Shown here piece after piece: positions 6,486 to 43,119 of a stretch of DNA of 64,000 nt. Numbering within the stretch: the stretch's first letter is position 1; every line of letters starts with the position of its first letter. The notes under the pieces are model-generated. The model did no database searches. It was not told the DNA's origin and saw nothing but the letters and a program-made list of their open reading frames with translations. The translations under genes were made by a program, and so were the position numbers. The DNA lies in the IMG/VR virus record IMGVR_UViG_3300049215_000771, positions 372,001 through 436,000 of that record. One strand, 5' to 3'.

Positions 6486-6647
6486 TTAGGAGGCATGAGA
6501 CGCCTCACGCAAATGGGCTTTGAAGGCTTCTCGAATGTCGTTTTGAGTGAGTTTTTCGACTGGTTTGTTGTGGCGGTGCGCCCACTCAATAATCTTTAAC
6601 AGCGCCCGCTCCCTTGTTTTGTCCAGCCAGTAGTTTCGCAGTTTCAT
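6486..6647 (-). CDS. small hypothetical protein (53 aa, below ORF-track cutoff)
   Basis: Translated by hand: MKLRNYWLDKTRERALLKIIEWAHRHNKPVEKLTQNDIREAFKAHLREASHAS; GAGG RBS. Confidence 0.6.
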   Translation of the reverse strand: MKLRNYWLDKTRERALLKIIEWAHRHNKPVEKLTQNDIREAFKAHLREASHAS

Positions 6648-6686
6648 GAGGTTCCCTCACTATAATGGAGCCAGGAGGAAAAAGCA

Positions 6687-27427: not shown

Positions 27428-28033
27428 TCATCCTTTTTTCTTGTTGTACAACCAGGAAGAAAACGACTCGGCCTTGACGCCGAAGTGTGCGGAAATGGCT
27501 TTCAGGTATGCGGGAATAGCCTCCTTCAACTTAGGATGGAGGCGGTAATCGTCAAGATCGTCGAATGGAATCCACTTGTAGTCACTGTGTTCGTCGCTCA
27601 GTTTGATCTTGAACTCCTTGGGGACCGCCATCAGAAAAACGTGGAAATGGTATGCCTTGTCCTTCATGTCAAAATGACCGAACTGCTTGGCATCAGGCAA
27701 CTTACCGATTTCCTCCCCTGTCTCTCGAATGGCGCAGTCCATCGGCGTTTCGCCGTCGTCTGCCCGTCCACCAGGGATGCACCACGTTTCTTTTTCGTCG
27801 CCTTTCTCTCGCTTGAGCAACAAGATGCTCTTCCCGTCCGTGTAAATGATGCCGGCTCCGAGCCGGCCCAGGTCGCCCTTGCCCTTGCCCTCAAAAAGAT
27901 CGGTGATCGTTGGGAAGACTTCTTCTCGTGTGATCCCCCATTCTGCGCATAGTGAACAAATGGCCCCCTGGCAGTGAATCCAGGAAGAAGAAACTGGCTT
28001 CCCGCAGTTGCAGCAGATGTTATAATCGGTCAT
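27428..28033 (-). CDS. Nudix hydrolase with N-terminal Zn finger
   Basis: Nudix box GGRADDGETPMDCAIRETGEEIG; LSDEHSDYKW; CCNC...CSLC. Confidence 0.92.
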   Translation of the reverse strand: MTDYNICCNCGKPVSSSWIHCQGAICSLCAEWGITREEVFPTITDLFEGKGKGDLGRLGAGIIYTDGKSILLLKREKGDEKETWCIPGGRADDGETPMDCAIRETGEEIGKLPDAKQFGHFDMKDKAYHFHVFLMAVPKEFKIKLSDEHSDYKWIPFDDLDDYRLHPKLKEAIPAYLKAISAHFGVKAESFSSWLYNKKKG

Positions 28034-28623: not shown

Positions 28624-28850
28624 CAATATCCTCCAGCCACTCTCGACGGCACGGCGAACAACTGATTCGTCTGCTGGGCCGGGACGGGGTAGCCCACGGT
28701 ATCCCTTGGCTTTTTCTTCTTGCATGGGCAGTCGGGCGGCAGTTGAACCTTTCTGTTCAACACTTCGTCATTCTCCAGCCATTGTCTGAAGGTTATCCCC
28801 AGGTCGGGCCGAGAACATCGCCGAATCTCGTTATCAGCCTTTCTTCCCAT
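28623..28850 (-). CDS. small protein with internal CTS-like motif; start uncertain
   Basis: ITFRQWLENDE; stop TGA overlaps the next ATG. Confidence 0.45.
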   Translation of the reverse strand: MGRKADNEIRRCSRPDLGITFRQWLENDEVLNRKVQLPPDCPCKKKKPRDTVGYPVPAQQTNQLFAVPSRVAGGY

Positions 28851-29668
28851 TCTTCCTTCTCCTTAGTGCCACGCTGAAGAATATCTTGTCCGTTCAACTG
28901 GACACCGCCGTTTGGTCCTGGCGGGTTCTGAATACGGGAACGAATCTCACCCAACATAATCCGAGCGAAAGCCAAGGCACCTTCCTGCATGGCTTGCTTC
29001 ACTTCCCTGAAGTTCGCTTTCTTCTGTAGATAGTGGACAACAACTGTATATGTACGGAAAGGAACAGGGTACAACTTCACATGGTTGTAACCACCCAGCC
29101 ATTCCCAACCGCCCTGCTGAGAAGAAATACGCTGGAACATGGCCTCGTATTGCTTGTAGAGTACCCACTCCGACATCTTGCCCCACACAGGTTGCTGTGG
29201 GTTGATACCACCAGCGATGGAGCCATAAGCACCAGCACCCATGTACTCCAGGGGGATAACGCCGCCCAGGTCAGAGGCCGAGAAAGCATAGACCGGCGTG
29301 CTGAGGTAAGAAACCTTGCGGATCAAACCAACATCTGGCGGCATCTCGTAAACGCTTTGGCCGGGGACGGTGTTGAAGGTGTGATACTGAAAGTATTCCA
29401 TCGGGGCGTAATCTTCAAAAATCATCAACGCCTCATCGACGGCCAAATCCAATTGTTGTTCATCAAGTTCCAATTTAATTGATGGCGCACCGAGCATACC
29501 TAGAACATAATGCTTGATCTGCTCACGAACGACCTCCCGTTCCTTCCTGGGACCGAGCAAGCGGACGTAAGTTGGATCGCATGGACCCAATGAGTTACAG
29601 TTGTTGCATTGAGCGTTGGCGTAGTCGGCCTTGGTAGGTCTGGAAACAAACAGCATATTGTGGTTCAT
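28793..29668 (-). CDS. gp13: neck protein, T4 gp13-like
   Basis: IKHYVLGMLGAPSIKLELDEQQL, LGEIRSR, PGPNGGVQLNG; TATATA 5 nt upstream of ATG 29668. Confidence 0.8.
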   Translation of the reverse strand: MNHNMLFVSRPTKADYANAQCNNCNSLGPCDPTYVRLLGPRKEREVVREQIKHYVLGMLGAPSIKLELDEQQLDLAVDEALMIFEDYAPMEYFQYHTFNTVPGQSVYEMPPDVGLIRKVSYLSTPVYAFSASDLGGVIPLEYMGAGAYGSIAGGINPQQPVWGKMSEWVLYKQYEAMFQRISSQQGGWEWLGGYNHVKLYPVPFRTYTVVVHYLQKKANFREVKQAMQEGALAFARIMLGEIRSRIQNPPGPNGGVQLNGQDILQRGTKEKEEWEERLITRFGDVLGPTWG

Positions 29669-29690
29669 GAAGCTATATACCGATACAGAA

Positions 29691-32561
29691 ATGAAATCTC
29701 TAAAGGATAGACGAGGCATGTTGCAAGAGACTTCCGTGACATTCAGGGACTTTTTCCAAGACAAGTTCTTCCATGTAGACAGGAAGTACGTCGATATTAC
29801 TATGTCCAACGTCCTGGCTGAAATGGCCGTCCCCCTGGACATCCAGAAGCTCCCTATTAAGCCAGACAAAGATGACATTGCCTTCCTACAACAATTTCCT
29901 GCACAGTATTGGGCACAAGCACTCCATCAGCGTTACTATGACGACCTTCGCAATGCCCTGAAAGATCGGGAAGCCCGTCGTGCGCCGGTCGAGAAACGAT
30001 TGTACGGACTTCTCAAACGAGCCTTCTTCACCGGCAACTACGATAAACTCCGTGGTCAGGTATCTGAAGAAATGATGACTCGCCTTGCGAACGGCGACTT
30101 CAAGCACGTCGTTGGGGATGACGATCTCACCGAGAAAGCCGCTCGCAAGTGGGCCGAACTCGAAACTGAGAAGCATACGCCTCATGCCAACCCGCCAGAA
30201 ACAGAAGAAGGTCTGCCGCCTGGCTACAAGCGATACACCTTCAAGGTAAGTCGCAATGGCAACAAAACTGTATCGTTCGTCGCCAAACCAGAAATAAACA
30301 GATTGGTTCACAAACTGGAACGTACAAGGGGACATGAACATCACCCGGAATCCGGGTTGCCGCAACTTGGCATGACTCACGGACAGTACGGGTACGACTT
30401 GTACGGACTTCAGGATGGCGATGATGCGCATCCACACGTCACTCGTGGTATGCAGCTTCCTCCACGAGATGAAGTTGCCACCCGTATGAGCGACTACCTG
30501 AACCACAACGCCCACCAGATGTACGGCAAGATCAAGGCTGACGATCCAGATATTACCTGGAAGCCAGTCGGGTCTGGCCGCACTATGTACAAAGACAATT
30601 GGGCCTGGAAGAAAATATACAACAAGATATTTTCCGGTTGGAACTCTCGCCTGTCTTCCGCCGAGCCTGGCAGCCTCACGCTGCCCAATGGGGATCGTGT
30701 GCCGCCAGAAGGAGGTTTCAGGTCTGAAAATCAGCGACGTGCCACAGCCCACAGGTTGGCAATGGCTGATACCATCAAGATGGCAGAAGAAGGCAAACTC
30801 AAAGGTCCGCCGATCCCAGGGATCGCCCCGGAAGGTTTACCTGTGAAGGTAAAATCGGAAGGCGGCAAGAAGAAACTCGATGCCCCGCCGCTTTACCTGC
30901 CGCACAAGAAGATGCCGGTTCGTGTCAAGAATGGTAATGGACCGCCAACGGTAGAAATGCACGATGTACCACTGGTCAATCCGATGGAATATCTCCGTCA
31001 GTTGGGCAGCGAGCCGGAAGACTACGACAAGGAAACCGGCATGATGTTGGTTCCAAATGACCAGCTTCGTGGACACAACCAAGACTACGTTCACGTTCCT
31101 CACAACGAGTTCAAGAAAGCCAAAGGCTACCTTGCTGGGGGCGCTCTGCATGTTACTCACAACTCAGCCGGTCGTATGCACCTTGATCCCTCCGATCCTG
31201 AATACCAGGAACGGAAGGAACACATTGAAAGCGAGATGCAGCAAACAGGGCTGAACGCCAAGAATGAGCCAGCACAAAATGGTGAGGGCGAATACTTCTA
31301 CGACATCGTGAAGGGCATCTGGAACTGTATTCGTAGTGCCTGCGGTGGTATGACGAATCACGAAGTCGAGATCATGAAGCAAAACGTACACGATCTTCAC
31401 CAGATGGTGTATCAGCGCATGATGATGAATCTTCGTGATGAACGCCTTGACACACCGAAAGGTCGGAGGGCTTTCGCTCGTAACGTCGCTTCTAGCTGGG
31501 CACAACAAGATTTGGGTGCGGGTGGTGGAACTCGTAGGCTTCGTCGTTTGAGCCAAGATGCTCGCAGTGCCAGTATGGACGCAACAACTCAGGGTGAAAG
31601 CGGCGACAGCCTCAGCTTGCGTGACTCCATTCAACAAAGGATGAGAGACAAAGATTCCGGCGAGGCCAAGATTGGTCAGGGTGAGAAGATTCGTCCTGGG
31701 GCTGGGCAGCACGCCTTCCCGTACAACATCGACAACTTGAGAACCACGATTGCCGAAATGGAGCGTGAAGCCCAAGAAGTTGACCAGGCTCGTGACCAAG
31801 CTATTCAGATGAGCAAGTCGCAGATTAGCGACGAGATTGCCGACCTGATCGGCGATGCTATTGCTGACAAGGCTGCGTTGACCATCAAGTTGGAGTATTT
31901 GCTCACTCAGTTGTACCTGCACGCTGGTTCGCCGGCCAACGAAGCCGAGTTTCAGGCCAAGGCCAAAGTCGAACAATACTCCCAAGGCAAAACGGCCAAG
32001 AAAATGATCGCCGCTTTCAAAGGCGATGCAGATATTCGGCAGATGTTGGCAGCCCCGGAAGGCCAACAGGGACCAGGCCAGCAGATGAGTCTGGCGCAAA
32101 AAGATGCTGTAGAAAGACTTGATGGAATCCTGAAGCAACTTCCACCAAACAAGCTGAAGGAGCCAGCCACGCAGCAAATGATCGACAACTACATTTCTGA
32201 GCAACCGCCAGAAGTGCAGGCTGTATTGAAGCCAATGGCAGATAAAGCGTTTGGCAGGGCTGCACCTGCGCAACCCGCTGCACAACCACAAGCGAAAAAA
32301 ACTCAACCTTCAGCCGGTGGCCCGCAGGACGAAGCAAACGCTATGATTCGTTCGCAGAATTGGCTCGGACTAGCCAACAACGCTTATTTCCTACACGTTG
32401 CCAACAAAGTACAGCTTCAGGCTATCATTGGCAAGTTGGAAGCAGCGATGCAGTCCTTGCAGGGCTTTGACCGTGACAACCACGAGTTTGCTGTTGCCCA
32501 TTTGAGAACATTGCTCAGGCAACGGCAGGCTCCAAAAACAGGATTGGACAAGATACAATGA
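29691..32561 (+). CDS. large putative virion-internal protein
   Basis: About 956 aa; CTATATA upstream; TFRDFF CTS-like motif; Q/A/P-rich C-terminus; internal sigma-like segment. Confidence 0.8.
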   Translation: MKSLKDRRGMLQETSVTFRDFFQDKFFHVDRKYVDITMSNVLAEMAVPLDIQKLPIKPDKDDIAFLQQFPAQYWAQALHQRYYDDLRNALKDREARRAPVEKRLYGLLKRAFFTGNYDKLRGQVSEEMMTRLANGDFKHVVGDDDLTEKAARKWAELETEKHTPHANPPETEEGLPPGYKRYTFKVSRNGNKTVSFVAKPEINRLVHKLERTRGHEHHPESGLPQLGMTHGQYGYDLYGLQDGDDAHPHVTRGMQLPPRDEVATRMSDYLNHNAHQMYGKIKADDPDITWKPVGSGRTMYKDNWAWKKIYNKIFSGWNSRLSSAEPGSLTLPNGDRVPPEGGFRSENQRRATAHRLAMADTIKMAEEGKLKGPPIPGIAPEGLPVKVKSEGGKKKLDAPPLYLPHKKMPVRVKNGNGPPTVEMHDVPLVNPMEYLRQLGSEPEDYDKETGMMLVPNDQLRGHNQDYVHVPHNEFKKAKGYLAGGALHVTHNSAGRMHLDPSDPEYQERKEHIESEMQQTGLNAKNEPAQNGEGEYFYDIVKGIWNCIRSACGGMTNHEVEIMKQNVHDLHQMVYQRMMMNLRDERLDTPKGRRAFARNVASSWAQQDLGAGGGTRRLRRLSQDARSASMDATTQGESGDSLSLRDSIQQRMRDKDSGEAKIGQGEKIRPGAGQHAFPYNIDNLRTTIAEMEREAQEVDQARDQAIQMSKSQISDEIADLIGDAIADKAALTIKLEYLLTQLYLHAGSPANEAEFQAKAKVEQYSQGKTAKKMIAAFKGDADIRQMLAAPEGQQGPGQQMSLAQKDAVERLDGILKQLPPNKLKEPATQQMIDNYISEQPPEVQAVLKPMADKAFGRAAPAQPAAQPQAKKTQPSAGGPQDEANAMIRSQNWLGLANNAYFLHVANKVQLQAIIGKLEAAMQSLQGFDRDNHEFAVAHLRTLLRQRQAPKTGLDKIQ

Positions 32562-32776: not shown

Positions 32777-33033
32777 ATTGGCTGACAATGTTGGCGAATC
32801 CCAAAGGATTTGCCATCCGAAAGATGATGTTCGAGTTTTTGAAGGAAAGATATGGGCGAAATGACCAGATCGTTGAACGCCTGTCGGCTTCTTTGACAAC
32901 TGAAGGAGACGTGCAGGCGTTCATTAAACTGATGATTGATGTCTACGAGAAAGGCTACATGCAGGCGGTCGATGACCATAAAGAACAATTAGCCAAGATC
33001 GGATTGAAAGTCAGTGTCAAACCACCGAGCTAA
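32773..33033 (+). CDS. hypothetical protein
   Basis: ATGA coupling. Confidence 0.75.
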   Translation: MNWLTMLANPKGFAIRKMMFEFLKERYGRNDQIVERLSASLTTEGDVQAFIKLMIDVYEKGYMQAVDDHKEQLAKIGLKVSVKPPS

Positions 33034-33698
33034 TCGACGTTATCAAACGCAGGTGTGAAATCGGATGGATAGCCGGCCATCAACCAGCCACCATTTTTTT
33101 CTTCAAGTTCTTGAACCCTCCACCACCTTTGAGCGTCCATCACGCCATCTCTTCTCTTTTTGGGATAAACCACAGAACCTTTCGTCACCAATGCCACGTT
33201 TGTCCACAGAACGATGCGCATATCTTCTTCTTCGAGAATGACACCCTCGAATGAAAATGGTTTGCCATACTGAATTGTTTGATATTTCTCGCCGTACATA
33301 CCATCACGGCGGTCACGCATGGTTGCTGGCAAACAATACATGAAAGTTTTGTTTCTGTCGGGGACGGAAGATTTTTTCCGAGGTTGTTCTGGTTCGGGAA
33401 CGAACTTAACGGGTTCTTCTTTGACTTCGGGGAGTGGCTGTGAGGGTTTTTCCTCAATGGGAGCGGGTCGTTGTTCGGTTACAACGATGTCTGGTTTGGT
33501 TTCAGCCAACGCCTGGGCGAAATCATCCCGAAGGTTGAAATCGCTCTCCATAGTGTTGATTTCTCGATCATCGAGAGCAGTTTCGGGCTGAAACTTCATA
33601 TTGTGAACCTGGAAATCTTGCCAGGTTTCCTGACCCTTCATCATTGGATTGGGGCCACGCAATTTGTACAGTGTGCCGTCACGATTCTTCAGTGCCAT
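33030..33698 (-). CDS. late hypothetical protein, N-terminus similar to the gp14-like protein
   Basis: MALKNRDGTLYKLRG vs MTILNPDGTPYKLTG (35042); TATATA-GAGT-ATG. Confidence 0.75.
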   Translation of the reverse strand: MALKNRDGTLYKLRGPNPMMKGQETWQDFQVHNMKFQPETALDDREINTMESDFNLRDDFAQALAETKPDIVVTEQRPAPIEEKPSQPLPEVKEEPVKFVPEPEQPRKKSSVPDRNKTFMYCLPATMRDRRDGMYGEKYQTIQYGKPFSFEGVILEEEDMRIVLWTNVALVTKGSVVYPKKRRDGVMDAQRWWRVQELEEKNGGWLMAGYPSDFTPAFDNVD

Positions 33699-33727
33699 AC
33701 TCTATATACGTTGAGAGGAGATAACCT

Positions 33728-34180: not shown

Positions 34181-34211
34181 AACCCGTCCTCATTTTGAGG
34201 ACGGGTTTTTT
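34181..34211 (+). terminator. intrinsic terminator
   Basis: AACCCGTCCTCA-TTT-TGAGGACGGGTT followed by a T-run. Confidence 0.8.
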
Positions 34212-34235
34212 GTTGCCGAACTCCTAAATACCCCC

Positions 34236-35045
34236 ATGATGGACACAACATTCAGACTTTGGCTAATCGACGAGGACTGGCGATCTCTGCTTGGCGCTAT
34301 CCTCCTGGAAACCGACGCCTTCGATGCGGCGATGGTTTCTTTCAATGCGCAGTTCGCACAAGCATTCGGTGGCATCCGTAAGAATTGGTTCGGCATTCTC
34401 ATTAGTCAGGCACAGCGCTACGCCCAAGGTCAGGACATCTTGACGGTCGCCAGCGATGCTGCCCAAGAAATGTTGCAACTACTACAAACCAAACCAGCCG
34501 GCGACCAGTTCGTTCAGGGTGTAGAACATATCCTCGCCATACCGGACGAAACACAGAAAGCAGAAGAACTAACAAACTTCTTCGCCACAGCAGGTCGATT
34601 GCGTGTCCGTCGTCATGCAGGCCAGTTCCATCGGCGACGGGATCAAATGACGACACACTTCAGCGCTATTGACGGAGGTTCGGCGAGCGGCGGTTCTGCT
34701 GTAAACAATGTCCGAGATAGAAGTTCTCCGACTGACTCCGAAGACCGCATGGAGTCTTTGCGTCGTGGCATCATGATGGAACTAGAGAAGATGAAACAAA
34801 GCGCTAACGATAAGCGCACCAAGGAGCGTTTCGAGTTGGCGAAACGGGTCGCCGAGAAGCGAATGGAGAACCCGCCTGAGTTTCCTGGCCTGGACGAACT
34901 GGAAGGAATGTTCCCGGAAGTGGGCAGAACGAAGTTGTTTCAGATTTTGCAAGACATTCAGGCTGCGGCCACGGCTGCGGCGTCGAAGATCGGCATTGAC
35001 ACTGCTAGTATTCAGGATGCAAAAAGGGCCAGGAAACACGGATGA
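34236..35045 (+). CDS. CTS-bearing protein with ECF-sigma-like features
   Basis: MMDTTFRLWLIDE; ASDAAQEML; C-terminal HTH-like GLDELEGMFPEVGRTKLFQILQDI; CTAAATA 5 nt upstream. Confidence 0.6.
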   Translation: MMDTTFRLWLIDEDWRSLLGAILLETDAFDAAMVSFNAQFAQAFGGIRKNWFGILISQAQRYAQGQDILTVASDAAQEMLQLLQTKPAGDQFVQGVEHILAIPDETQKAEELTNFFATAGRLRVRRHAGQFHRRRDQMTTHFSAIDGGSASGGSAVNNVRDRSSPTDSEDRMESLRRGIMMELEKMKQSANDKRTKERFELAKRVAEKRMENPPEFPGLDELEGMFPEVGRTKLFQILQDIQAAATAAASKIGIDTASIQDAKRARKHG

Positions 35046-35584
35046 CGATATTGAACCCGGATGGGACTCCTTACAAGCTGACGGGAAGCATCGAACAGTT
35101 TGATCCAAATGATCCAGAACATGAGTTATTCAACTTGTGGGATCAGGAGGCTATCAGACAGGGTGGATCGCCCATTCTCTACTACGAGGTAATCATCTCG
35201 CCGCAAGATGTTGATCCACAATACCTGGAAGCTAGAAACAAGAGATTCAGCCAATTCCCGGTGTCGTTGTATTGCAGCTACGATCCGAAGAACGCCCAAA
35301 ACTTGGTAAATGCCTTCGGCATCGACGCTCCTGATGAATTGGAGATTGAATTCAACTACAGGGACGTGTTGCAGAAGGTAGGGCACCCACCCAAAATTGG
35401 GTCGAGGTTATACACTCCTCACCTGCGGGAAAATTGGGTAATCATTCAAAGGAACCTTGGTGAGTTCAAGATGTGGGGTGCGTTGCGTTTGACAATCATC
35501 GCACAAAGGTTCCAGGAATCTACAACTACCGGCGAAGGAAAAGTTACACAAAAAAATCCAACGCCCAAGTACAAGATCATCTAA
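35042..35584 (+). CDS. gp14: neck/head-closure protein, T4 gp14-like
   Basis: QEAIRQGG..I.YY, FGIDAPDEL, PKIGSRLY; position near gp13/gp15. Confidence 0.7.
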   Translation: MTILNPDGTPYKLTGSIEQFDPNDPEHELFNLWDQEAIRQGGSPILYYEVIISPQDVDPQYLEARNKRFSQFPVSLYCSYDPKNAQNLVNAFGIDAPDELEIEFNYRDVLQKVGHPPKIGSRLYTPHLRENWVIIQRNLGEFKMWGALRLTIIAQRFQESTTTGEGKVTQKNPTPKYKII

Positions 35585-35592
35585 GGAGCATC

Positions 35593-36072
35593 ATGAAGTC
35601 ATTCTACAAGTTCTATCAGCAAGTTCTCAAAGAAGCAGCCGCTCCTGTTGGGCAGAATTCAGGTCAGCCACAGGCGGCAGGTGGAGCGCCAGGTGGCGCT
35701 GCCCCACCAGCACCAGGAACAGCAGCCCCTCCTGGCCAACCGCCAGCGCCTCCAGGACAAGGGGCACCAGGTCAGCCAGGTCAGCCAGGTCAACAAGGTC
35801 AGCAAGGTGGAGGCGGACAAGGTGTAGCCCCACCAGTACCGCCTCCTGATCCGGCAGTACAACAAATTCAACAATTACTCAATCCGCTGGCGGCGCAACT
35901 TCAGGGACACATTGAGAAGATTCAAGACCCGAAGGTGAAGGAAGCCCTGAAAAGTGTGTTGGGTCAAGGAGGCAATAACCAACAGCATCAGGCTGCTGGA
36001 AATGCACAACCGAAACCGCAACCTGTCCAACCTCCAGCACAGGCAGGCGCAGCAAAACAGCCCGGTCAATAG
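35593..36072 (+). CDS. CTS-bearing Q/P/G/A low-complexity protein
   Basis: MKSFYKFYQQVLKE then PGQ repeats; AAGGAG RBS. Confidence 0.8.
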   Translation: MKSFYKFYQQVLKEAAAPVGQNSGQPQAAGGAPGGAAPPAPGTAAPPGQPPAPPGQGAPGQPGQPGQQGQQGGGGQGVAPPVPPPDPAVQQIQQLLNPLAAQLQGHIEKIQDPKVKEALKSVLGQGGNNQQHQAAGNAQPKPQPVQPPAQAGAAKQPGQ

Positions 36073-36299: not shown

Positions 36300-37298
36300 A
36301 TGAGCCAGCTTCCACAAGACCCACAGAAAAGTTTGCCTGAATGCCAGATCAAGTCGGAAACTCCGACACCGAATCTGGACCCGGCACCACCATATTGTGG
36401 GCGTGACGAAGACGACCAGGTGAGCAAGCGTGCTATCAACGACGATTTCTCAAACTGGTTGAAGGACGACCTAAATCAGAAACAAGGCTACGGAGCCAAG
36501 GTTGACTGCGACCCGATGATGACGGGTCACATCCGAAATGATCCCAACAAGCCGAACAAGAACACTCTCTACCGTTATTCCAAGGCATTGAGAGGAACTG
36601 ATGAAGCTATCTTGGATATGTTCGGTGACATTGAAGTAATTGACGAGGATGGCAAGGCACATCCAGTCCCAATCATTTGGGGCAGTCAAGAGAAGGCAGT
36701 CGCCGCCATTATGTTTGATAACGTCAGGAAGGACGAGTCGCTGGTGGTTGATCGGATTAGGCTGCCGATGTTGGCAGTTTCTTCCACGGATTTTTCCTAC
36801 GACATGAATCGTTACACCTACCACCAGGCGTTGGACTTCATGCGATACCTTCGTCCCGACAGAAAGCCGGGCATGACGTTGAATGAAGGAGGGCTGGAAA
36901 GAAGCACAATTTTCGGGAAAACACGGGGTATTCCGGTGAACGTCACCTACACGTTGATAGCGTGGACGATGTACATCGAAGACATGAACCAAATCCTCGA
37001 ACAAATTCTTCTAAAATTCAGCCCCATTGCATACATACGAGTAAGAGGCGTATCCTGGGAAGTCGTCGCCAAGTTAGACAGCATCGCTAATAACTTGGAT
37101 ACGGAACCGGGAGATCAGGCGATCAGGGTGATTAAATTTCAGTTCAACATAACGGCTGAAACATACATCCCACAGCCAATTGCAAGAAGGAAGGCCATCC
37201 TCAAAACGAAAGTTGAACTTGTGGATGGCATGACCGAGGACGAAATCACGCAGGTAATGGCCAGACTGGAAGAAGCTGTTAAGGAGCTAGAATGCTAG
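36300..37298 (+). CDS. gp15: tail terminator/sheath stabilizer, T4 gp15-like
   Basis: VPIIWGSQEK, RLPMLAV, IPVNVTYTL, DMNQILEQIL. Confidence 0.85.
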   Translation: MSQLPQDPQKSLPECQIKSETPTPNLDPAPPYCGRDEDDQVSKRAINDDFSNWLKDDLNQKQGYGAKVDCDPMMTGHIRNDPNKPNKNTLYRYSKALRGTDEAILDMFGDIEVIDEDGKAHPVPIIWGSQEKAVAAIMFDNVRKDESLVVDRIRLPMLAVSSTDFSYDMNRYTYHQALDFMRYLRPDRKPGMTLNEGGLERSTIFGKTRGIPVNVTYTLIAWTMYIEDMNQILEQILLKFSPIAYIRVRGVSWEVVAKLDSIANNLDTEPGDQAIRVIKFQFNITAETYIPQPIARRKAILKTKVELVDGMTEDEITQVMARLEEAVKELEC

Positions 37299-37516
37299 AG
37301 ATCAAGAATAACATGAAACATCCGGTTCAGTTGGTGATTCGTTCAAGGAAGGCTCCTCGTGCTTTCACCTGTCTAAACATTCCAGGAGTAGGTGCCGGAA
37401 AAAATACCTTTCTCTTGGAAGAAGGAAGAGAAACACCGTATATAGACAGGGCCGAGAAAGAAGGATTGATTTCCACAAGGCACATACCAAACAAGATTAG
37501 CGCAAAGGGAGAATAA
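37292..37516 (+). CDS. small hypothetical protein
   Basis: AAGGAG RBS; lies between gp15 and sheath. Confidence 0.7.
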   Translation: MLEIKNNMKHPVQLVIRSRKAPRAFTCLNIPGVGAGKNTFLLEEGRETPYIDRAEKEGLISTRHIPNKISAKGE

Positions 37517-37518
37517 CT

Positions 37519-39879
37519 ATGGCGATTCTACAGGGATTTCCGCCTTCCAATACTATTAGCCCTAGTATTCGGATCACAGAGCAAGATTTGAGTTTCATTC
37601 CGCCAGCGTTGACATTCGCCAATGCGGGTATCGTTGGTTTCGCCAGCAAAGGTCCAGTCAACCTGCCGGTGAACATCACGTCGGTAAGACAACTCAACAC
37701 CGTGTTCGGCTATCCGCACCCGGAAGTAGGCGACCCGTACTTGATTTACGCTGCGATGCAGTATCTTTTGGTTTCGACCACTTTGTACTGTGTTCGTGTA
37801 GCTGTCACCGATCCATTGAGTGACGAGCAGGCTTTGACTGCTCAGGTTGCGGTTCCGGCTGCTGGTACGGTTGTGCAGATCACTTCCGACACAGTTGGCC
37901 CGTACACCTTCAACGTGGACTCGTTCTTCCGTTGGAGGCTGAATGGTGTCCTTTCTTCCAAGACCCTAGTGGTTTTGGCTGGAACATACAACGTAGGCGA
38001 TCTGGTCGCTGACCTGAACGCACAGGTTGACACCGAGAACGACGGCATCCAGTTCTTCGTCAGCAACACGAACACCATTGGTGTCGAGACGCTGTGGGCA
38101 TACGGCCCGAACGCAACGCTGGAATTGGTGTCTGTACAGGACGCCATCTATGGCGACACGGTTCTGAACGGCAACCCAACTGGTTTGGGCACGGGCATGA
38201 CGAAAGCCGAAGTCATTGGTACTTTGGCAATGTACCCGAACGTAGCTTACCAGACACCTGGTAACTACGACTTCACGGGTCTGACTGGCCTGAACTTGGT
38301 TGTCTTGGTAGACGGCACGGACAACGTACTGATCGACCAGGTTGCACAGGTCATTGACCTTTCCTCCTTGGAGGGCCAGGTCAACACCATCGGTCAGGTC
38401 GTCATAGCAATCAACAACGAGTTGGCATCGAACGGTGGAACGCTGCCGGGTGGTTGGCAGGCTGTGGCGGTTGGCAACAACCTCGCCTTCAAGACCCTCA
38501 CCACTGGTCAGGACGCTCGCATTCGCATTAGCTCCTCCAGCACCGCAGCAGGCATCTTCGGCCTGGACACCATCACCCACATCGGTACATCGCCGAGCGG
38601 CGTAACTGGTGATCCGGCAATTGAAACTTTCGCTATCGTTTCTGGTGGCGTCAACAACGCTGGTACACCATCCTTCACCGTTCTGGCTGACAGCACGGGT
38701 ATTGAAGGAAACCAGACTCAGGTAGTCATTACGAACGATGTGAGCGACAGCACGTTCATCATCAACGTGTTCAACAATGGTGGGCCGGTCGAAGCCTGGG
38801 GCAATTTGACCAAGGATCAGTCGAGCGCCTACTACATTGAAACGTACATGGCGTTGGTATCCGACTTCATCAGGGTTGTGGACAACACCAACACCACTGC
38901 TGGACCGACTGCTGGTACTTACCAGTTGTCAGGTGGTACGGACGGTATCCCGGCTGACCCGGACGATCAGGACGCATTGCTGATCGGTAACAATCTCGCC
39001 TTCACCGGAATGTACTCCATCTCCGACCCGGAGCAGATTGACATCGACTTGGTTGCTGTTCCTGGACACTCCAGCACAAGCGTCGTTATGGCGATGCTGA
39101 ACCTTTGCCAGAACATCCGTCAGGACTGCTTGGCAATTGTTGACCCGCCATTCGGCTTGACCGTACAGGAAATCATCGCTTGGCAGAATGGTGCCCACCC
39201 GCTGAACCTGGTGCAGTTCAACTCCGACTTCGGAGCGCTGTACTGGCCGTGGGTACAGATCACCGACACCTTCAACCGTGTCCAGGTCTGGATTCCACCA
39301 TCGGGTAGCGTGATGGCAACCATCGCCCGTTCCGACTTCTTGGCCGCACCGTGGTTCGCCCCGGCTGGTCTGAACCGTGGACAGGTGCCTGGAATTGTGA
39401 ACGTATACAACAGGCCATCTCTCACAGAACGTGATGCGATGTATGGCAACGCAAATGCAATCAACCCGATTGTATCGTTCCCGGATGCTGATGGGTTCTT
39501 CATTTGGGGCCAGAAGACTTTGCAAAGGCTTCCGACACTGCTTGACCGTGTGAACGTCAGGCGATGTCTGTTCTACATCGAGAAGCAGATGCGTCAGGCT
39601 TGCCGCACCCTGCTGTTCGAGCCGAACGATGCTAAATTCCAGCAGCAGTTCGTGACGTTGACAACGAACATCCTGCGGGCCGTCCAGATTGGCCGTGGTA
39701 TTTATGACTTCATCATTGATGCCGGTGCTGACCTGAACACCCCGGACGTTATCGACAGGAATGAGTTCCGTGCGAAGATTGGTATCCAGCCAGTCCCAGC
39801 GGTTGAATTCATCTTCCTTGAGTTCGACGTATTCAAAACTGGTGCCTTCGTCACCGCCAACGGCGTTGACGGTTTCTAA
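37519..39879 (+). CDS. gp18: contractile tail sheath protein
   Basis: ISPSIRITEQD, GFASKGP, GALYWPW, PPSG, PWFAPAGLNRG, INPI, WGQKTL, DRVNVRR, LFEPND. Confidence 0.97.
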   Translation: MAILQGFPPSNTISPSIRITEQDLSFIPPALTFANAGIVGFASKGPVNLPVNITSVRQLNTVFGYPHPEVGDPYLIYAAMQYLLVSTTLYCVRVAVTDPLSDEQALTAQVAVPAAGTVVQITSDTVGPYTFNVDSFFRWRLNGVLSSKTLVVLAGTYNVGDLVADLNAQVDTENDGIQFFVSNTNTIGVETLWAYGPNATLELVSVQDAIYGDTVLNGNPTGLGTGMTKAEVIGTLAMYPNVAYQTPGNYDFTGLTGLNLVVLVDGTDNVLIDQVAQVIDLSSLEGQVNTIGQVVIAINNELASNGGTLPGGWQAVAVGNNLAFKTLTTGQDARIRISSSSTAAGIFGLDTITHIGTSPSGVTGDPAIETFAIVSGGVNNAGTPSFTVLADSTGIEGNQTQVVITNDVSDSTFIINVFNNGGPVEAWGNLTKDQSSAYYIETYMALVSDFIRVVDNTNTTAGPTAGTYQLSGGTDGIPADPDDQDALLIGNNLAFTGMYSISDPEQIDIDLVAVPGHSSTSVVMAMLNLCQNIRQDCLAIVDPPFGLTVQEIIAWQNGAHPLNLVQFNSDFGALYWPWVQITDTFNRVQVWIPPSGSVMATIARSDFLAAPWFAPAGLNRGQVPGIVNVYNRPSLTERDAMYGNANAINPIVSFPDADGFFIWGQKTLQRLPTLLDRVNVRRCLFYIEKQMRQACRTLLFEPNDAKFQQQFVTLTTNILRAVQIGRGIYDFIIDAGADLNTPDVIDRNEFRAKIGIQPVPAVEFIFLEFDVFKTGAFVTANGVDGF

Positions 39880-39909: not shown

Positions 39910-40485
39910 ATGGGAATACCAATGGGTATGGGACTGCTGGGCGGTCCAGACATCGTGTTCAAAAGGAAGTATAGGTGGACTTTCAACCTAGACGTTCCTT
40001 GCGGCCCGCCAATCGGCGAGCAAGTCGTCAAACTGGCTGCTAGGCCAAACCTGACGATTGAAGAAACTGAAATCAACTTCTTGCACGGCAAGATGTGGAT
40101 TCCGGGTAAGGGTACATGGGAAACCATTACCGTTACCTATTACGACATCGGCAACGACCCGACGCTGAGTGGTTTGTACTCGTGGCTTGCTACGATCTAC
40201 GACTTCACCAACCCGGTGAATCTCTACCAGTCGTCTCGTCGTGGTGACGGTGGAGCTACCCCAGGTTACTCCGGTGAGGCGGACCTGGCGCTCTATGACG
40301 GTTGCGGTAACATCATGGAAAACTGGCACCTGAGCAACTTGTGGCCACAGGCCATTAACTTCGGTGAGTTGGACTACTCGTCCTCTGAAGAAGTTACGAT
40401 TGAGTTGACTCTCCGTTACTCCGAAGTTACCTACACCCCGTACTGCGGTGTCAGCTTCACTCCTTGCTGCGACGGTTGCGACTAA
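39910..40485 (+). CDS. gp19: tail tube protein
   Basis: KRKYRW, ARPNL, PGKGTWETITVT, WPQAINFGELDYSSSE..IELTLRY; directly after sheath. Confidence 0.92.
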   Translation: MGIPMGMGLLGGPDIVFKRKYRWTFNLDVPCGPPIGEQVVKLAARPNLTIEETEINFLHGKMWIPGKGTWETITVTYYDIGNDPTLSGLYSWLATIYDFTNPVNLYQSSRRGDGGATPGYSGEADLALYDGCGNIMENWHLSNLWPQAINFGELDYSSSEEVTIELTLRYSEVTYTPYCGVSFTPCCDGCD

Positions 40486-40594: not shown

Positions 40595-41110
40595 ATGGGA
40601 AGACCAATGGGCTTCGACTTCGGGCTTCAAGACCCGCAGTCATGCTTCAAACGAAAACACCGCTGGCTTTTCACAATTCCTGATGTGAGCGCCAGCGGCG
40701 TGAATTCCTTGCCGCCCTCGAAGGGTGCAAGACCAAATTTGTCATTCAAGGAAGGTGAGGCACAGCACATCTCGGAAACTGTCTACTACCCTATGAAACC
40801 GGAATGGAAACCCGTCAACTTGACCTTGTACGAGGTCAAACGACCAGGCGGACATCCAGTTTTCAACTGGATAGAAGACATTTACAACCCGGCTGGCGAC
40901 TCGCAATTCCTGCCATCTTGCGATGGATTCAAACAAAACCAATGCACGCTGGAAATGTATGATGGTTGCGGTAAAGTCATCGAAACCTGGGTATTCGAGA
41001 ATGTGTGGGTCCAAAGCGTCGAGTTTGGTGATCTTGACATGGCGTCGAGCGATCTGGTGGTTTGTGAATTAACCCTCCGGTACGACCGTGCTTATGTAGA
41101 AAGCAATTAG
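40595..41110 (+). CDS. tail tube protein paralogue 2
   Basis: FKRKHRW, ARPNL, YDGCG, FGDLDM..ELTLRYD. Confidence 0.88.
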   Translation: MGRPMGFDFGLQDPQSCFKRKHRWLFTIPDVSASGVNSLPPSKGARPNLSFKEGEAQHISETVYYPMKPEWKPVNLTLYEVKRPGGHPVFNWIEDIYNPAGDSQFLPSCDGFKQNQCTLEMYDGCGKVIETWVFENVWVQSVEFGDLDMASSDLVVCELTLRYDRAYVESN

Positions 41111-41425: not shown

Positions 41426-41965
41426 TCAAGATTTCGTACTATTGTTGTGAACACTTCGTTGCGTTTTTTGCGTCCGAACTGACTGATCTACCTGCGTTTG
41501 CATGAAATCATGGTATTTCTTCTTCAGTTCGTTGTAGTTTCTGGCTGTTCGATATAGTTGTCGAAAATGGTTGAGTATGCAAGTAGTCATGTAATTGAAA
41601 GCCTTGCCTTTGGCGGGGTCGAACCTGTCGATCTTCTCGAAACATATCATCACCCCTTCCTGGATGGCATCGTCCTGGTCGATTAGGTTGAACTTGGCAT
41701 AGCGAACAATGTTCTCCGACAAAGTGTAGAACGCCGTCGCCAGTTCCTTCTGCGCATCAATAAACCTCTTGCTCACAACTTCAAATGCCGCCTGGGTAAG
41801 AACCCAAGATTCCGGCTTCTGATACTTGTTTCTTTTCGCCGTTCTCGCTTCCGTTGCCATGATGTCTTCGATTATCATTTCATACTTTGCCCGCTCCCGT
41901 TTCGCTTCTTGGAACTTCGAGATGATCTTCTCGAAGTTTTTGTTGTTCAAATACTCCGTCGCCAT
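41426..41965 (-). CDS. gp55: late-transcription sigma factor, T4 gp55-like
   Basis: EYLNNKNF N-terminus; DDAIQEGVMICFEKIDRFDPAKGKAFNYMT; no region 4. Confidence 0.85.
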   Translation of the reverse strand: MATEYLNNKNFEKIISKFQEAKRERAKYEMIIEDIMATEARTAKRNKYQKPESWVLTQAAFEVVSKRFIDAQKELATAFYTLSENIVRYAKFNLIDQDDAIQEGVMICFEKIDRFDPAKGKAFNYMTTCILNHFRQLYRTARNYNELKKKYHDFMQTQVDQSVRTQKTQRSVHNNSTKS

Positions 41966-42053: not shown

Positions 42054-42917
42054 TCATTCATTCTCCCAGGTGGCAATCCTCGCAAGGGCGGCGGTCTTCG
42101 CATCTTGATACCAGCCGTTGGCAGTCTCGTAATAGTCGGGGTTGTATAATTTGCCGGATGTGAAGCTGCGGAAATGGTCGATGTTTTCGTCAGTTTGTCG
42201 TTGAAAATTCTTGTCGTGCCCAATCAGATGCGGCTTCACCTTGTACATGCGCAAGATGTAGTTTCCCAAAATTTCAGTGTCGGGCCAATTTGGTCGCAGT
42301 GGTGTCGGGCGATAATCTTCCATGTCGTAGAGATTACAAAGCCTGCGCTGGCTCCATCCGAATCCCATCTTGTCCATCGAAGGCATATGGTACATAGTCG
42401 CCGTATGGCTCACCATGCCATGCCAGTCGGAATGATTCCGTGGACTGAGTTCATAGCCAACCACGGGGGATGTGGCCGGGCACAAAGTCAGCAAATACTC
42501 AATGAAATCTCGTTTTTTGAGAAAACAATCGGCGTGGGTAGCGTATAAAAATGGAGTACGGCAAAGAGTGAAGGCCAAATCCATAGCCATAGCGGGGAAA
42601 TCAGATGGATGTAGGACTCCGTTCAATCGAATGGCGTGTACCTCGATGTTGTCGCTTCTCAGGGACTCGATCTTAGCGTACTCTTCCGGGGTACTGCCAG
42701 TGTCGATGACGAGTATGTATGGTTTGATGGTCTGAAGATTCAACAATTTCACGCATATTTCCAACTGCTCGAAAGTATCAATAACAGGAATGGCCGCAGT
42801 TACCTGGTAGCTCCAGGGCTTCTGAGTGCATGACCCTTCCCACGGTCGCTGATGTGCTAACTTTCCCCGCAGTGGGGCCAAATCGGTTTTCGTGTCGCTC
42901 TTTTGGGGCATGGACAT
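42054..42917 (-). CDS. GT2-like glycosyltransferase
   Basis: AAIPV, LVIDTGST, HADCF. Confidence 0.75.
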   Translation of the reverse strand: MSMPQKSDTKTDLAPLRGKLAHQRPWEGSCTQKPWSYQVTAAIPVIDTFEQLEICVKLLNLQTIKPYILVIDTGSTPEEYAKIESLRSDNIEVHAIRLNGVLHPSDFPAMAMDLAFTLCRTPFLYATHADCFLKKRDFIEYLLTLCPATSPVVGYELSPRNHSDWHGMVSHTATMYHMPSMDKMGFGWSQRRLCNLYDMEDYRPTPLRPNWPDTEILGNYILRMYKVKPHLIGHDKNFQRQTDENIDHFRSFTSGKLYNPDYYETANGWYQDAKTAALARIATWENE

Positions 42918-43119
42918 CTTCCAAATACTCGTGCAACTGCTCGAAAGGCCAAACGCCCCACGACACTATCGCCAGATGAGAGATTTCTACATCTCCCAGG
43001 GCAAAGTCGTTGAAGCTGAAGCAGTTAGCCACCTAATAGAGAAGAGATTCGGCAAAAATGAAGTTGGCGACCCATCTGATCTTGAGGAACAACAAACACA
43101 CGCTGGAACGGGCAGTTGA
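42910..43119 (+). CDS. small hypothetical protein
   Basis: Short ORF overlapping the start of the next gene. Confidence 0.55.
   Translation: MDIFQILVQLLERPNAPRHYRQMRDFYISQGKVVEAEAVSHLIEKRFGKNEVGDPSDLEEQQTHAGTGS

What the first reader, a model, noticed from the sequence alone, without database searches (positions are those of the whole stretch)
34236..35045. Candidate virion-packaged ECF-like sigma factor within the neck gene cluster
Seen: late promoter, CTS-like start, ASDAAQEML (region 2.2-like), basic region-2.4-like helix, linker, then AKRVAEKRM...GLDELEGMFPEVGRTKLFQILQDI (region 4 HTH-like). It is translationally coupled to gp14. Inference: a sigma made late, packaged, and injected to start the next infection. 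That would be an unusual strategy.
Basis: inference. Interest (0 to 1): 0.62.

Follow-up and report, generated by a model that had tools for sequence, protein, structure and literature searches.

The report
Sigma-like protein with capsid-targeting-like leader
A giant T4-like phage from moss metagenomes has, in its neck gene cluster, a conserved gene whose product is predicted to fold like a two-domain bacterial sigma factor and starts with a leader resembling phage T4's capsid-targeting tag, so it may be loaded into the phage head and injected, but that is not yet shown.

Summary
The ORF at 34236-35045 (+, 269 aa) is real. Every quoted motif is present, and it overlaps the next ORF by ATGA.

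It belongs to an unannotated family of about 25 cluster representatives. In five related contigs it sits at the same place: gp13 ... 143 aa | this gene | 180 aa | P/Q-rich | gp15 | sheath.

No sequence library calls it a sigma factor. AlphaFold models give two confident helical domains joined by a disordered linker. The N-domain alone finds sigma-2 domains as its top seven PDB matches. The C-domain fully covers sigma-4 structures. A profile comparison with ECF sigmas is colinear but weak (P about 0.015).

The 'late promoter' (CTAAATA, 5 nt, ATG, just after a strong terminator) and the 'CTS-like start' belong to a genome-wide class. Of 31 ORFs with [CG]TAnATA-N5-ATG, 19 begin M-x(0-5)-[FY]-x-x-[WFY]-[LIVF]-...-E, much like T4's MKTYQEFIAE. 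The same promoter type precedes gp13. A T4-type prohead protease is encoded, and no phage multisubunit RNA polymerase was found.

Sigma-like fold, neck context and both signals are supported. RNA polymerase binding, late timing, cleavage, packaging and injection are inferred. The 'gp14' label for the 180-aa neighbour is unverified.

The parts
34181..34207 (+). Intrinsic terminator hairpin (12-bp stem, T-run) that ends the upstream 144-aa gene. It sets this gene at the start of a new transcription unit.
   Evidence: Equivalent hairpins precede the homologous gene in L002, L007, L009 and L010.
34224..34230 (+). CTAAATA promoter-like heptamer, 5 nt before the ATG. It resembles a T4-type late -10 element, and the spacing implies a leaderless or near-leaderless mRNA.
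   Evidence: spacing 5 has 26 sites within 1 mismatch, other spacings 1-10. CTANATA occurs 85 times against about 217 expected. The motif is conserved in homologous loci. The same type precedes gp13.
34236..35045 (+). ORF of 269 aa: a sigma-like protein of an unannotated phage family.
34236..34310 (+). N-terminal leader, residues 1-25. It holds the CTS-like motif MMDTTFRLWLIDE and two [LIV]-x-E sites, ending at E13 and E25. It is acidic and modelled with low confidence.
   Evidence: F6 and W9 are at least 90% conserved. The motif is shared by at least 19 other ORFs of this genome. T4 CTS sequence. [LIVM]-x-E positions.
34344..34646 (+). Sigma-2-like four-helix domain, residues 37-137. ASDAAQEML aligns with region 2.2 and the basic FFATAGRLRVRR... 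helix aligns with regions 2.3/2.4.
   Evidence: pLDDT is about 90-97. The top seven VIA matches are all sigma-2 domains. hhalign alignment.
34647..34724 (+). Disordered Gly/Ser-rich linker, residues 138-163. No sigma-3 domain.
   Evidence: pLDDT below 50. These alignment columns are variable and gappy.
34728..35003 (+). Sigma-4-like helix-turn-helix domain, residues 165-256.
   Evidence: Sigma-4-only structures are fully covered: 2h27_D 69/69, 5fgm_A 65/65, 3vep_D 68/68. hhalign alignment to region 4.
35042..35584 (+). 180-aa ORF whose start overlaps the stop of the sigma-like ORF (ATGA).
   Evidence: Conserved as the next gene in all five homologous loci. No family hit.
35593..36072 (+). Third gene of the unit: a 159-aa Pro/Gln/Gly-rich protein that also begins with a CTS-like leader, MKSFYKFYQQVLKE.
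   Evidence: The leader is conserved in L002, L007, L009 and L010.
28793..29668 (-). gp13-like neck/adaptor gene (291 aa), preceded by GTATATA-N5-ATG.
   Evidence: Orthologues carry PF26809 Phage_T4_gp13. Weak SU10_adaptor hit. Promoter.
36300..37298 (+). gp15 tail sheath stabiliser (tail completion).
   Evidence: PF16724, E = 2e-20.
37519..39879 (+). Tail sheath.
   Evidence: PF04984, PF17482 and phrog_23.
41426..41965 (-). Recognisable gp55-like late sigma (179 aa, Sigma70_r2 only). Presumed reader of the [CG]TAnATA promoters.
   Evidence: PF04542 at 31.4 bits, above the 24-bit cut-off.

Best explanation
The gene encodes a very divergent derivative of the sigma-70 family with ECF-like architecture: a sigma-2-like domain, a flexible linker and a sigma-4-like helix-turn-helix domain, with no sigma-3. 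A 25-36-residue acidic leader precedes these domains.

**Proposed mechanism.**
1. The gene is the first of a three-gene unit (sigma-like, 180 aa, P/Q-rich) in the neck/tail module. The unit starts just after a terminator at a CTAAATA element placed 5 nt before the ATG.
2. This element is read as a T4-type late promoter served by the phage's gp55-like sigma. It would give a leaderless mRNA.
3. The leader (F-R-x-W-L-I-D-E ... L-L-E) works like the T4 capsid-targeting sequence. It takes the protein into the prohead core.
4. The phage's T4-type prohead protease trims the leader after a [LIV]-x-E site.
5. The mature protein of about 245-256 aa travels in the head and enters the next cell with the DNA.
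6. There it binds host core RNA polymerase. The phage has no recognisable multisubunit polymerase of its own.
7. It directs the polymerase to phage promoters before any phage gene is expressed.

**Shown here:** the ORF, its family, the conserved synteny, the overlap with the next gene, the terminator, the motif and its spacing, the leader class, and the fold-level likeness to sigma-2 and sigma-4.

**Inferred:** late timing, leaderless start, targeting, cleavage, packaging, RNA polymerase binding and promoter specificity.

**My estimates:**
- Sigma-derived fold: about 0.8.
- Acts on RNA polymerase: about 0.6.
- Packaged: about 0.45.
- The whole chain: about 0.3-0.4.
For: **Fold.**
- The whole-protein AF2 model has mean pLDDT 80.8, with two helical domains and a linker below pLDDT 50.
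- Against 48,161 PDB representatives, about 21 of the top 50 rows are sigma-70-family chains. The top row, ECF SigL 6dv9_F, aligns 158 residues across both domains in order. Sigma-4-only entries are fully covered.
- The N-domain folded alone has pLDDT 84.5 and pTM 0.71. Its top seven matches are all sigma-2 domains (Z 5.5-6.1, rmsd 3.0-4.1 A, 73-80 residues), and about 19 of the top 42 are sigma-2.
- The ESM Atlas feature search and the search with the Atlas's own model both put sigma-70 clusters first.

**Sequence profile.**
- hhalign of the family against 11 ECF sigmas aligns 185 columns colinearly, P = 0.017 local and 0.014 global.
- The reversed template gives P 0.29-0.4. The best of 30 column shuffles gives P 0.33.

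**Context.**
- Synteny is identical in L002, L007, L008, L009 and L010 at 37-77% identity.
- No PF00562 or PF00623 polymerase genes were found in the 532-kb record.

**Promoter.**
- The spacing is rigid, the motif is under-represented genome-wide, and it is conserved in homologous loci.
- The same type precedes gp13 and the conserved gene of about 225 aa.
- A gp55-like sigma is encoded nearby.

**Leader.**
- 19 of 31 ORFs with this promoter type carry the leader, against 20 of 6,867 others.
- The leader also occurs on genes led by a Shine-Dalgarno site. One is a 114-aa gene inside the head module, and another is the third gene of this unit.
- The T4 CTS is MKTYQEFIAE and is cut once by the prohead protease.
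- PF03420 prohead protease scores 99.6 bits.

**Expression.** Pieces of the ORF lie in RNA-library contigs of three samples. A neighbouring minus-strand gene has none and the sheath gene is deep.
Against: - No Pfam, NCBIfam, PHROG or PDB sequence or profile hit to any sigma.
- Foldseek finds nothing at E <= 0.001 for the whole model or the N-domain.
- VIA Z-scores of 5-7.5 lie in the range the tool warns can arise by chance for helical proteins.
- The Atlas shape search with my whole model returned no sigma.
- The hhalign P of about 0.015 is weak.
- The complex prediction gave no verdict.
- The leader class includes a thymidylate kinase and a NUDIX hydrolase, which one would not expect to be packaged.
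- The regex for the leader was written after seeing the data, so its P-value is inflated.
- The gp55-like gene also sits in the structural module, so location alone does not argue for packaging.
- P0002 and several other members lack a clean [LIV]-x-E right after the motif.
- RNA contigs cannot show start sites or timing.
Confidence: 0.38

Rival explanations
1. It is a sigma-like transcription factor that is not packaged. It is made with the structural genes and acts in the same infection, for example on a very-late promoter class or alongside the gp55-like sigma, which lacks a sigma-4 domain. The shared N-terminal motif would then be something other than a capsid tag. It could be a conserved 5' cassette (promoter plus first codons) spread by recombination, or a feature that helps translation or stability of these proteins.
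For: - The fold evidence is the same as for the best explanation.
- The recognisable gp55-like sigma also lies inside the tail module, so regulators do sit among structural genes here.
- The leader class includes metabolic-type enzymes: a thymidylate kinase and a NUDIX hydrolase.
- In the one proteomic report I found, a phage sigma in a virion preparation was judged to be carry-over (PMC5618024).
Against: - The leader occurs on both leaderless-type and Shine-Dalgarno-led genes, with variable Met-to-Phe distance. This points to a peptide-level signal.
- It closely resembles the experimentally defined T4 CTS.
- A T4-type prohead protease is present.
- Tight coupling to a conserved neck-module gene has no obvious reason for a pure regulator.
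Confidence: 0.3
2. It is not a sigma factor at all. It would be a helical virion, scaffold or assembly protein of the neck/head, for example an internal or ejection protein or an assembly chaperone. The predicted helices would resemble sigma-2 and sigma-4 only as a common helical arrangement.
For: - No sequence model of any sigma region is matched.
- All structural scores are modest, and Foldseek E-values are 0.19 or worse.
- The Atlas shape search gave unrelated helical proteins.
- The position in the neck module is conserved, with overlap to the next gene.
- The leader and the neighbouring P/Q-rich protein look like head-internal cargo.
Against: - Sigma factors are a small fraction of the PDB representatives, yet they fill the top seven rows for the N-domain and about 21 of 50 rows for the whole model. 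Both domains match in the right order, with a linker where ECF sigmas have one.
- An independent language-model search also ranks sigma clusters first.
- The profile alignment is colinear over 185 columns and beats all controls.
Confidence: 0.2
3. It is a sigma mimic that binds host core RNA polymerase as a decoy or inhibitor (host shut-off) and does not direct initiation. It could be packaged or not.
For: - The protein is sigma-like but strongly diverged.
- The helix that would read the -35 element carries a conserved acidic/neutral D-I-Q motif, not the usual basic run.
Against: - Net charge of the domain is within the range of 11 real ECF sigmas, so this argument is weak.
- The basic region-2.4-like helix is conserved: R123 is at least 90% conserved.
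Confidence: 0.1

Closest known systems
ECF (group 4) sigma-70 family factors, e.g. M. tuberculosis SigL/SigH and E. coli sigma-E
   Same: Two-domain architecture (sigma-2, flexible linker, sigma-4, no sigma-3). These are the best structural matches for each domain and for both in order.
   Different: It fails all curated sequence models. It has an extra N-terminal leader of about 36 residues and an extra short helix (91-100) in the sigma-2-like domain. It is encoded in a phage neck operon. No anti-sigma partner or promoter is known.
Phage T4 internal proteins IPI/IPII/IPIII and their capsid targeting sequence
   Same: An N-terminal leader of about 10 residues with the pattern aromatic-x-E-aromatic-aliphatic-x-E (T4: MKTYQEFIAE). 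A late-type promoter. A T4-type prohead protease in the genome. Many unrelated cargo proteins share only the leader.
   Different: Packaging and cleavage are untested here. The cargo would be a sigma-like protein, not a small basic anti-restriction protein. The Met-to-motif spacing varies, and some members lack a clean cleavage motif.
T4 gp55 late sigma
   Same: A phage-encoded sigma-family protein of a T4-like phage.
   Different: gp55 is a sigma-2-only protein, and this phage has its own recognisable copy at 41426-41965 (-). The family studied here shows no detectable relation to it and carries a sigma-4-like domain.
Virion-packaged transcription machinery (N4 vRNAP, AR9/phiKZ virion RNA polymerases)
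   Same: The proposed logic is the same: made late, packaged, injected, and transcribes early genes (PMC4496689 and PMC5449584, listed).
   Different: Those phages inject a whole polymerase. Here only a specificity subunit for the host enzyme would be injected. I found no established case of that.

Membership tests
Sigma-70 family (ECF-like, group 4) | Sigma-2 domain fold (regions 2.1-2.4) | tested here: met
   The N-domain model (pLDDT 84.5) has sigma-2 domains as its top seven PDB-representative matches and as about 19 of the top 42. Z is 5-6.1 and rmsd about 3-4 A over 73-80 residues. The Z values are modest, so the case rests on rank and enrichment.
Sigma-70 family (ECF-like, group 4) | Sigma-4 helix-turn-helix domain | tested here: met
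   Residues about 165-256 cover whole sigma-4 structures: 2h27_D 69/69, 5fgm_A 65/65, 3vep_D 68/68, Z about 6.5. Other HTH folds score similarly, so this alone is not specific.
Sigma-70 family (ECF-like, group 4) | Sigma-2 and sigma-4 in this order, joined by a flexible linker, with no sigma-3 | tested here: met
   The linker at 138-163 has pLDDT below 50. 6dv9_F aligns 158 of its 174 residues across both domains.
Sigma-70 family (ECF-like, group 4) | Match to curated sequence models (Pfam Sigma70_r2, r4, r4_2, ECF; NCBIfam sigma models) | tested here: not met
   No hit for the protein or for any of 24 family members. A family profile against PDB sequences finds no sigma.
Sigma-70 family (ECF-like, group 4) | Profile-profile sequence similarity to ECF sigmas | tested here: inconclusive
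   hhalign gives P = 0.014-0.017 over 185-201 colinear columns. Reversed and 30 shuffled controls give P >= 0.29.
Sigma-70 family (ECF-like, group 4) | Binds core RNA polymerase (beta' clamp helices, beta flap) | not testable with these tools
   The one complex prediction, with E. coli beta' 215-350, returned 'no answer'. This is not evidence either way.
Sigma-70 family (ECF-like, group 4) | Directs promoter-specific initiation | not testable with these tools
   Needs in vitro transcription. No cognate promoter was identified.
T4-type CTS-targeted head internal proteins | N-terminal targeting leader resembling MKTYQEFIAE and ending at a prohead protease site ([LIV]-x-E) | tested here: met
   The leader is MMDTTFRLWLIDE, with I-D-E ending at residue 13 and L-L-E at residue 25. 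F6 and W9 are at least 90% conserved in the family. T4 sequence from PMC8442874. This is a resemblance of pattern only.
T4-type CTS-targeted head internal proteins | The same leader shared by several otherwise unrelated proteins of the phage | tested here: met
   At least 19 ORFs carry it, among them SAM-lyase-like, C39 peptidase, NUDIX and dTMP kinase proteins and many of unknown function.
T4-type CTS-targeted head internal proteins | T4-type prohead protease (gp21, Peptidase_S77) encoded | tested here: met
   PF03420 at 99.6 bits at G000 337280-337738, next to the scaffold and major capsid genes.
T4-type CTS-targeted head internal proteins | Late expression | tested here: inconclusive
   The promoter-like motif resembles the T4 late TATA box and also precedes gp13. 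No time-resolved data exist. RNA contigs show only presence.
T4-type CTS-targeted head internal proteins | Presence of the processed protein in virions and ejection with the DNA | not testable with these tools
   Needs virion proteomics.
T4 gp55 late sigma | Sigma70_r2-only protein of about 180 aa | tested here: not met
   Another gene fills this role (41426-41965 (-), PF04542 at 31.4 bits). hhalign of the family against it gives P = 0.43.

The most novel reading that the evidence does not exclude
A giant T4-like phage loads a sigma-like specificity subunit into its head through a T4-type capsid-targeting leader. It does this together with about twenty other leader-tagged cargo enzymes. It injects the protein with the DNA, so host RNA polymerase is reprogrammed from the first moment of infection without any prior phage gene expression. 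The phage would deliver a sigma factor where others deliver a whole virion RNA polymerase.
Probability: 0.27. Interest if true: 0.85.

Novelty: new variant of a known kind. Interest (0 to 1): 0.62.

Why it matters
Phages are known to seize host transcription in three ways: by injecting a whole RNA polymerase, by making sigma factors after entry, or by injecting enzymes that modify the host polymerase. I found no established case of an injected sigma factor. The one proteomic detection I found was dismissed by its authors as carry-over (PMC5618024).

If this protein is packaged, that would be a new and economical take-over strategy. It would also explain how a 0.5-Mb phage without its own polymerase can use non-host promoters at time zero.

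Two results stand independently of that question.
- The family is an unannotated, very divergent branch of sigma-like proteins that current models miss.
- The leader plus leaderless late-type promoter defines a candidate set of about 20 head-cargo proteins in an uncultured megaphage. This can be tested with reporter fusions in T4 and with proteomics of virus-like particles.

Tried and rejected
**Searches that found nothing.**
- Sequence searches found no sigma and no annotated relative. These were Pfam, PHROGs and NCBIfam on the protein, Pfam on all 24 family members, and PDB by sequence and by family profile.
- tblastn and megablast against 50,697 phage records gave no match.
- The search for related loci in IMG/VR gave none.

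**Structure searches.**
- Foldseek against the PDB found nothing at E <= 0.001 for either model.
- The ESM Atlas shape search with my whole model gave unrelated helical proteins. This is probably because the relative position of the two domains is arbitrary.

**Complex prediction.** The N-domain with E. coli beta' residues 215-350 returned 'no answer'. This is not evidence for or against binding.

**Paralogue checks.**
- hhalign of the family against the 175-aa leader-bearing protein just beyond the window gave P = 0.14.
- hhalign against the gp55-like sigma gave P = 0.43.
- There is no relation in either case.

**Charge of the sigma-4-like domain as a test of DNA binding.** It does not discriminate, because real ECF sigmas span the same range.

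**Deepening the ECF profile.** A database search returned only relatives at least 80% identical, so the profile could not be improved.

**RNA-library contigs.** They show presence only. They cannot show a transcript start, a strand or timing.

**The 180-aa neighbour.** I could not confirm it as gp14. Its only notable feature is an N-terminal 'DGT-YKL-G' motif shared with the divergent 222-aa gene.

**Other intergenic motifs.** A scan for a second intergenic motif that might be this protein's own promoter found only the TAnATA family clearly enriched.
Full report
**Setting.** The window is bases 372001-436000 of a 532,729-bp IMG/VR virus record. The identical protein also lies on a 673-kb contig. 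The record encodes:
- T4-type head genes: portal, prohead protease, scaffold and major capsid protein at genome 330-340 kb.
- In the window, gp13-like, gp15, sheath and two tube genes.

No multisubunit RNA polymerase domains were found. The DNA is held by moss metagenome runs.

**The observation.**
- ORF 34236-35045 (+) encodes 269 aa, and all quoted peptide strings are present.
- Its stop overlaps the ATG of the next ORF, 35042-35584, as ATGA.
- A strong intrinsic terminator (34181-34207, 12-bp stem) closes the upstream 144-aa gene.
- CTAAATA (34224-34230) lies exactly 5 nt before the ATG.

**Is it a real gene?**
- An exhaustive HMMER search of 1.8 billion representatives finds 25 relatives, 19 of them at E <= 1e-10. 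Most are 220-290 aa and aligned end to end.
- Alignment A1 shows conserved blocks in both halves and a variable middle.
- Five related contigs at 37-77% identity carry the gene at the same place: gp13 (-) | about 940 aa | small ORFs | about 225 aa (-) | 143 aa | this gene | 180 aa | P/Q-rich | gp15 | 73 aa | sheath | tube.
- In L008 the gene is tandemly duplicated.
- Contigs from three metatranscriptome runs cover parts of the ORF at low depth. The sheath gene is deep in the same runs, and the neighbouring minus-strand 222-aa gene has none. This fits transcription better than DNA carry-over, but contigs cannot show starts or timing.

**Is it a sigma factor?**

*By sequence: no.* There is no Pfam, NCBIfam or PHROG family, no PDB relative even with the family profile, and no hit for any member.

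*By predicted structure: yes, at fold level.*
- The AF2 model (mean pLDDT 80.8) has two confident helical domains, 6-137 and 165-268, and a linker below pLDDT 50.
- I aligned the model to one chain from each of 48,161 PDB clusters. About 21 of the top 50 rows are sigma-70-family chains.
- The top row, ECF sigma L in an initiation complex (6dv9_F), aligns 158 residues across both domains in order.
- Isolated sigma-4 structures are fully covered by residues about 165-255.
- Because the two domains float relative to each other, I folded residues 1-140 alone (pLDDT 84.5, pTM 0.71).
- Its seven best matches are all sigma-2 domains: ShbA, SigH, an M. tuberculosis sigma, an EcfG-type RpoE, SigL, the sigma of an RNA-guided transcription complex, and SigW. 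Z is 5.5-6.1 and rmsd 3.0-4.1 A over 73-80 residues. About 19 of the top 42 are sigma-2.
- The Z values are in the range the tool warns about for helical proteins, and Foldseek gives nothing significant. The argument therefore rests on rank, enrichment and colinearity, not on any single score.

*Independent leads agree.*
- The ESM Atlas feature search and the search with the Atlas's own model put sigma-70 clusters first.
- The shape search with my whole model did not.

*Profile test.*
- I took 11 ECF sigma genes from the MAG that holds contig L008.
- hhalign of A1 against them aligns 185 columns colinearly, P = 0.017 (0.014 global).
- ASDAAQEML falls on region 2.2, the basic helix on regions 2.3/2.4, and GLDEL...ILQDI on the region 4.2 helix-turn-helix.
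- The reversed template gives P 0.29-0.4, and the best of 30 column shuffles gives 0.33.

*Conclusion.* The protein is most likely a very divergent sigma-70-family derivative with ECF-like architecture. It fails the curated sequence criteria, so I do not file it as a family member on sequence grounds.

**The phage's other sigmas.**
- A gp55-like, Sigma70_r2-only protein at 41426-41965 (-).
- A 322-aa protein at genome 90260-91228 with region 4 above Pfam's cut-off and region 2 just below it on the called ORF.

Neither is related to this family.

**The 'late promoter'.**
- Genome-wide, heptamers within one mismatch of CTAAATA lie 5 nt before an ATG that opens an ORF of at least 40 aa 26 times. 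Any other spacing has 1-10.
- CTANATA occurs 85 times against about 217 expected from base composition.
- TATATA-type words are the most enriched intergenic 7-mers.
- The element keeps its position before the homologous gene in L002 (6 nt), L007 and L009 (5 nt), and as TATATAA in L010. Each time it follows a terminator.
- The same [CG]TAnATA-N4/5-ATG arrangement precedes gp13 and the conserved gene of about 225 aa, here and in L007, L009 and L010.
- A copy with a leader of about 20 nt and a GGAG site precedes the 144-aa gene.
- T4 late promoters are an 8-bp TATA box at the -10 position (PMC2988020). From my own knowledge its sequence is TATAAATA, whose last six bases equal TAAATA here.
- Together with the gp55-like sigma, this makes 'late-type promoter' the best reading, and the spacing implies leaderless mRNAs. 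Neither point is measured.

**The 'CTS-like start'.**
- Of 31 ORFs with [CG]TAnATA-N5-ATG, 19 begin with M-x(0-5)-[FY]-x-x-[WFY]-[LIVF]-x(0-4)-[EDQ]. Among 6,867 other ATG-ORFs, 20 do (Fisher 1e-37). The regex was written after seeing the data.
- A stricter five-residue pattern has 18 hits in 163,719 residues, five of them within six residues of the initiator Met.
- Examples: MKTFYEWLHEA, MKTFLEWLKLRE, MSNFKEFVDLDE, MRFKEFLLIE.
- The motif also occurs on Shine-Dalgarno-led genes. One is a 114-aa gene between portal and protease (MKTFSQFV), and another is the third gene of this unit (MKSFYKFYQQVLKE, conserved in four homologous loci). This argues for a peptide signal, not an RNA feature.
- The T4 capsid-targeting sequence is MKTYQEFIAE. 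It is removed by a single cut, and it carries any fused protein into the head (PMC8442874; PMC3012670).
- In the family studied here, F6 and W9 are at least 90% conserved. Most members have a hydrophobic-x-E site about 20-26 residues in.
- Proteins of the class with a recognisable domain are two SAM-lyase-like proteins, a C39-type peptidase, a NUDIX hydrolase and a thymidylate kinase. The rest are unknown.
- The first two kinds fit an injected counter-defence arsenal. The kinase fits less well.

**Mechanism and rivals.**
- Best reading: a sigma-like protein made from a late-type leaderless promoter as the first gene of a neck-module unit, tagged for the prohead, trimmed, carried in the head, injected, and acting on host core polymerase. 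I give the whole chain about 0.3-0.4.
- Rivals are a non-packaged sigma-like regulator (0.3), a helical virion or assembly protein that only resembles sigma (0.2), and an RNA-polymerase-binding decoy (0.1).
- The complex prediction with an E. coli beta' fragment gave no verdict and counts for nothing.
- I found no established case of a packaged sigma. A phage sigma seen in a Twort-like virion preparation was attributed to carry-over by its authors (PMC5618024).

**Host hint.** The MAG holding the related contig L008 has ECF sigmas whose near-identical database relatives are named Acidobacteriota/Pyrinomonadaceae. Binning of a phage contig is weak evidence of host.

**Verdict.**
- The feature is a new, unannotated variant of a sigma-like protein with an unusual leader and context.
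- Packaging is untested.

Noticed in passing
G000 genome-wide, e.g. G000:C1:157336(-), 202824(+), 237232(-), 352580(+), 352827(+), 436542(-), 503663(+); in the window 34236(+), 35593(+), 14410(+): A class of about 20 or more genes begins with a T4-CTS-like leader (M-x-x-F-K/R-E-W/F-L-...-E). Most are preceded by [CG]TAnATA exactly 5 nt before the ATG, a leaderless-type arrangement. Recognisable cargo: two SAM-lyase-like proteins, a C39 peptidase, a NUDIX hydrolase and a thymidylate kinase. This is a candidate head-cargo set.
   Followed up: partly
window 41426-41965 (-): A gp55-like late sigma (179 aa, Sigma70_r2 at 31.4 bits) lies between the tube and baseplate genes. A GTATATA element lies about 55 nt upstream.
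   Followed up: partly
G000:C1:90260-91228 (+) (L046:261-1229): A 322-aa sigma-70-family gene elsewhere in the genome. On the called ORF, region 4 scores 28.2 bits (cut-off 24.1) and region 2 scores 22.9 bits (cut-off 24). The six-frame search gave region 2 26 bits.
   Followed up: partly
window 29673-29680 and 33702-33709; also 14382/14389, 42019/42026, 44440/44447, 57245/57252: Palindromic (C/G)TATATA(G/C) elements sit between divergent genes (gp13 and the 956-aa gene; the 222-aa and 144-aa genes). They look like bidirectional promoters.
   Followed up: partly
window 29691-32561 (+): A conserved protein of about 956 aa with no known family lies next to gp13. It has a CTS-like motif (VTFRDFFQDKFF) near its N-terminus. 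In L009 the motif is at the very start. It may be a large internal or ejection protein.
   Followed up: no
window 35593-36072 (+): A 159-aa Pro/Gln/Gly-rich low-complexity protein lies between the 180-aa ORF and gp15. It has a conserved leader MKSFYKFYQQVLKE and a Shine-Dalgarno site.
   Followed up: partly
window 35042-35584 (+) and 33030-33698 (-): The 180-aa and 222-aa proteins share an N-terminal motif, M-x-(L/I)-x-N-x-DGT-x-YKL-x-G. The rest of the two proteins does not align. The 222-aa gene has GTATATA 4 nt before its ATG.
   Followed up: no
G000:C1:58177-58380, 351378-351485, 453543-453695, 517826-517984: Four short ORFs (88-149 aa), scattered over the genome, each match a different segment of the T4 major capsid protein model (Gp23). 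The full-length capsid gene is at 338843-340279.
   Followed up: no
window 39910-40485 and 40595-41110 (+): Two adjacent gp19-type tail tube paralogues.
   Followed up: no
window 25572-26954 (+) and 27428-28033 (-): An NAMPT/NAPRTase gene and a NUDIX hydrolase gene (an NAD salvage pair) lie just upstream of the neck module. The pair is conserved in L002.
   Followed up: no
L008:5192-6004 and 6001-6849: In a related contig the sigma-like gene is tandemly duplicated (P0008 and P0005). The upstream copy lacks the CTAnATA element.
   Followed up: partly
window 37079-38400: In three of the four metatranscriptome runs, long deep contigs over the sheath gene begin at 37079-37120, about 400-440 nt upstream of its ATG and inside gp15. 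No promoter motif was seen there. Contig ends are not reliable starts.
   Followed up: no
window 42054-42917 (-) and 43058-44020 (+): Glycosyltransferase family 2-like genes inside the tail/baseplate region, the first only a weak match below Pfam's cut-off and the second carrying TPR repeats.
   Followed up: no
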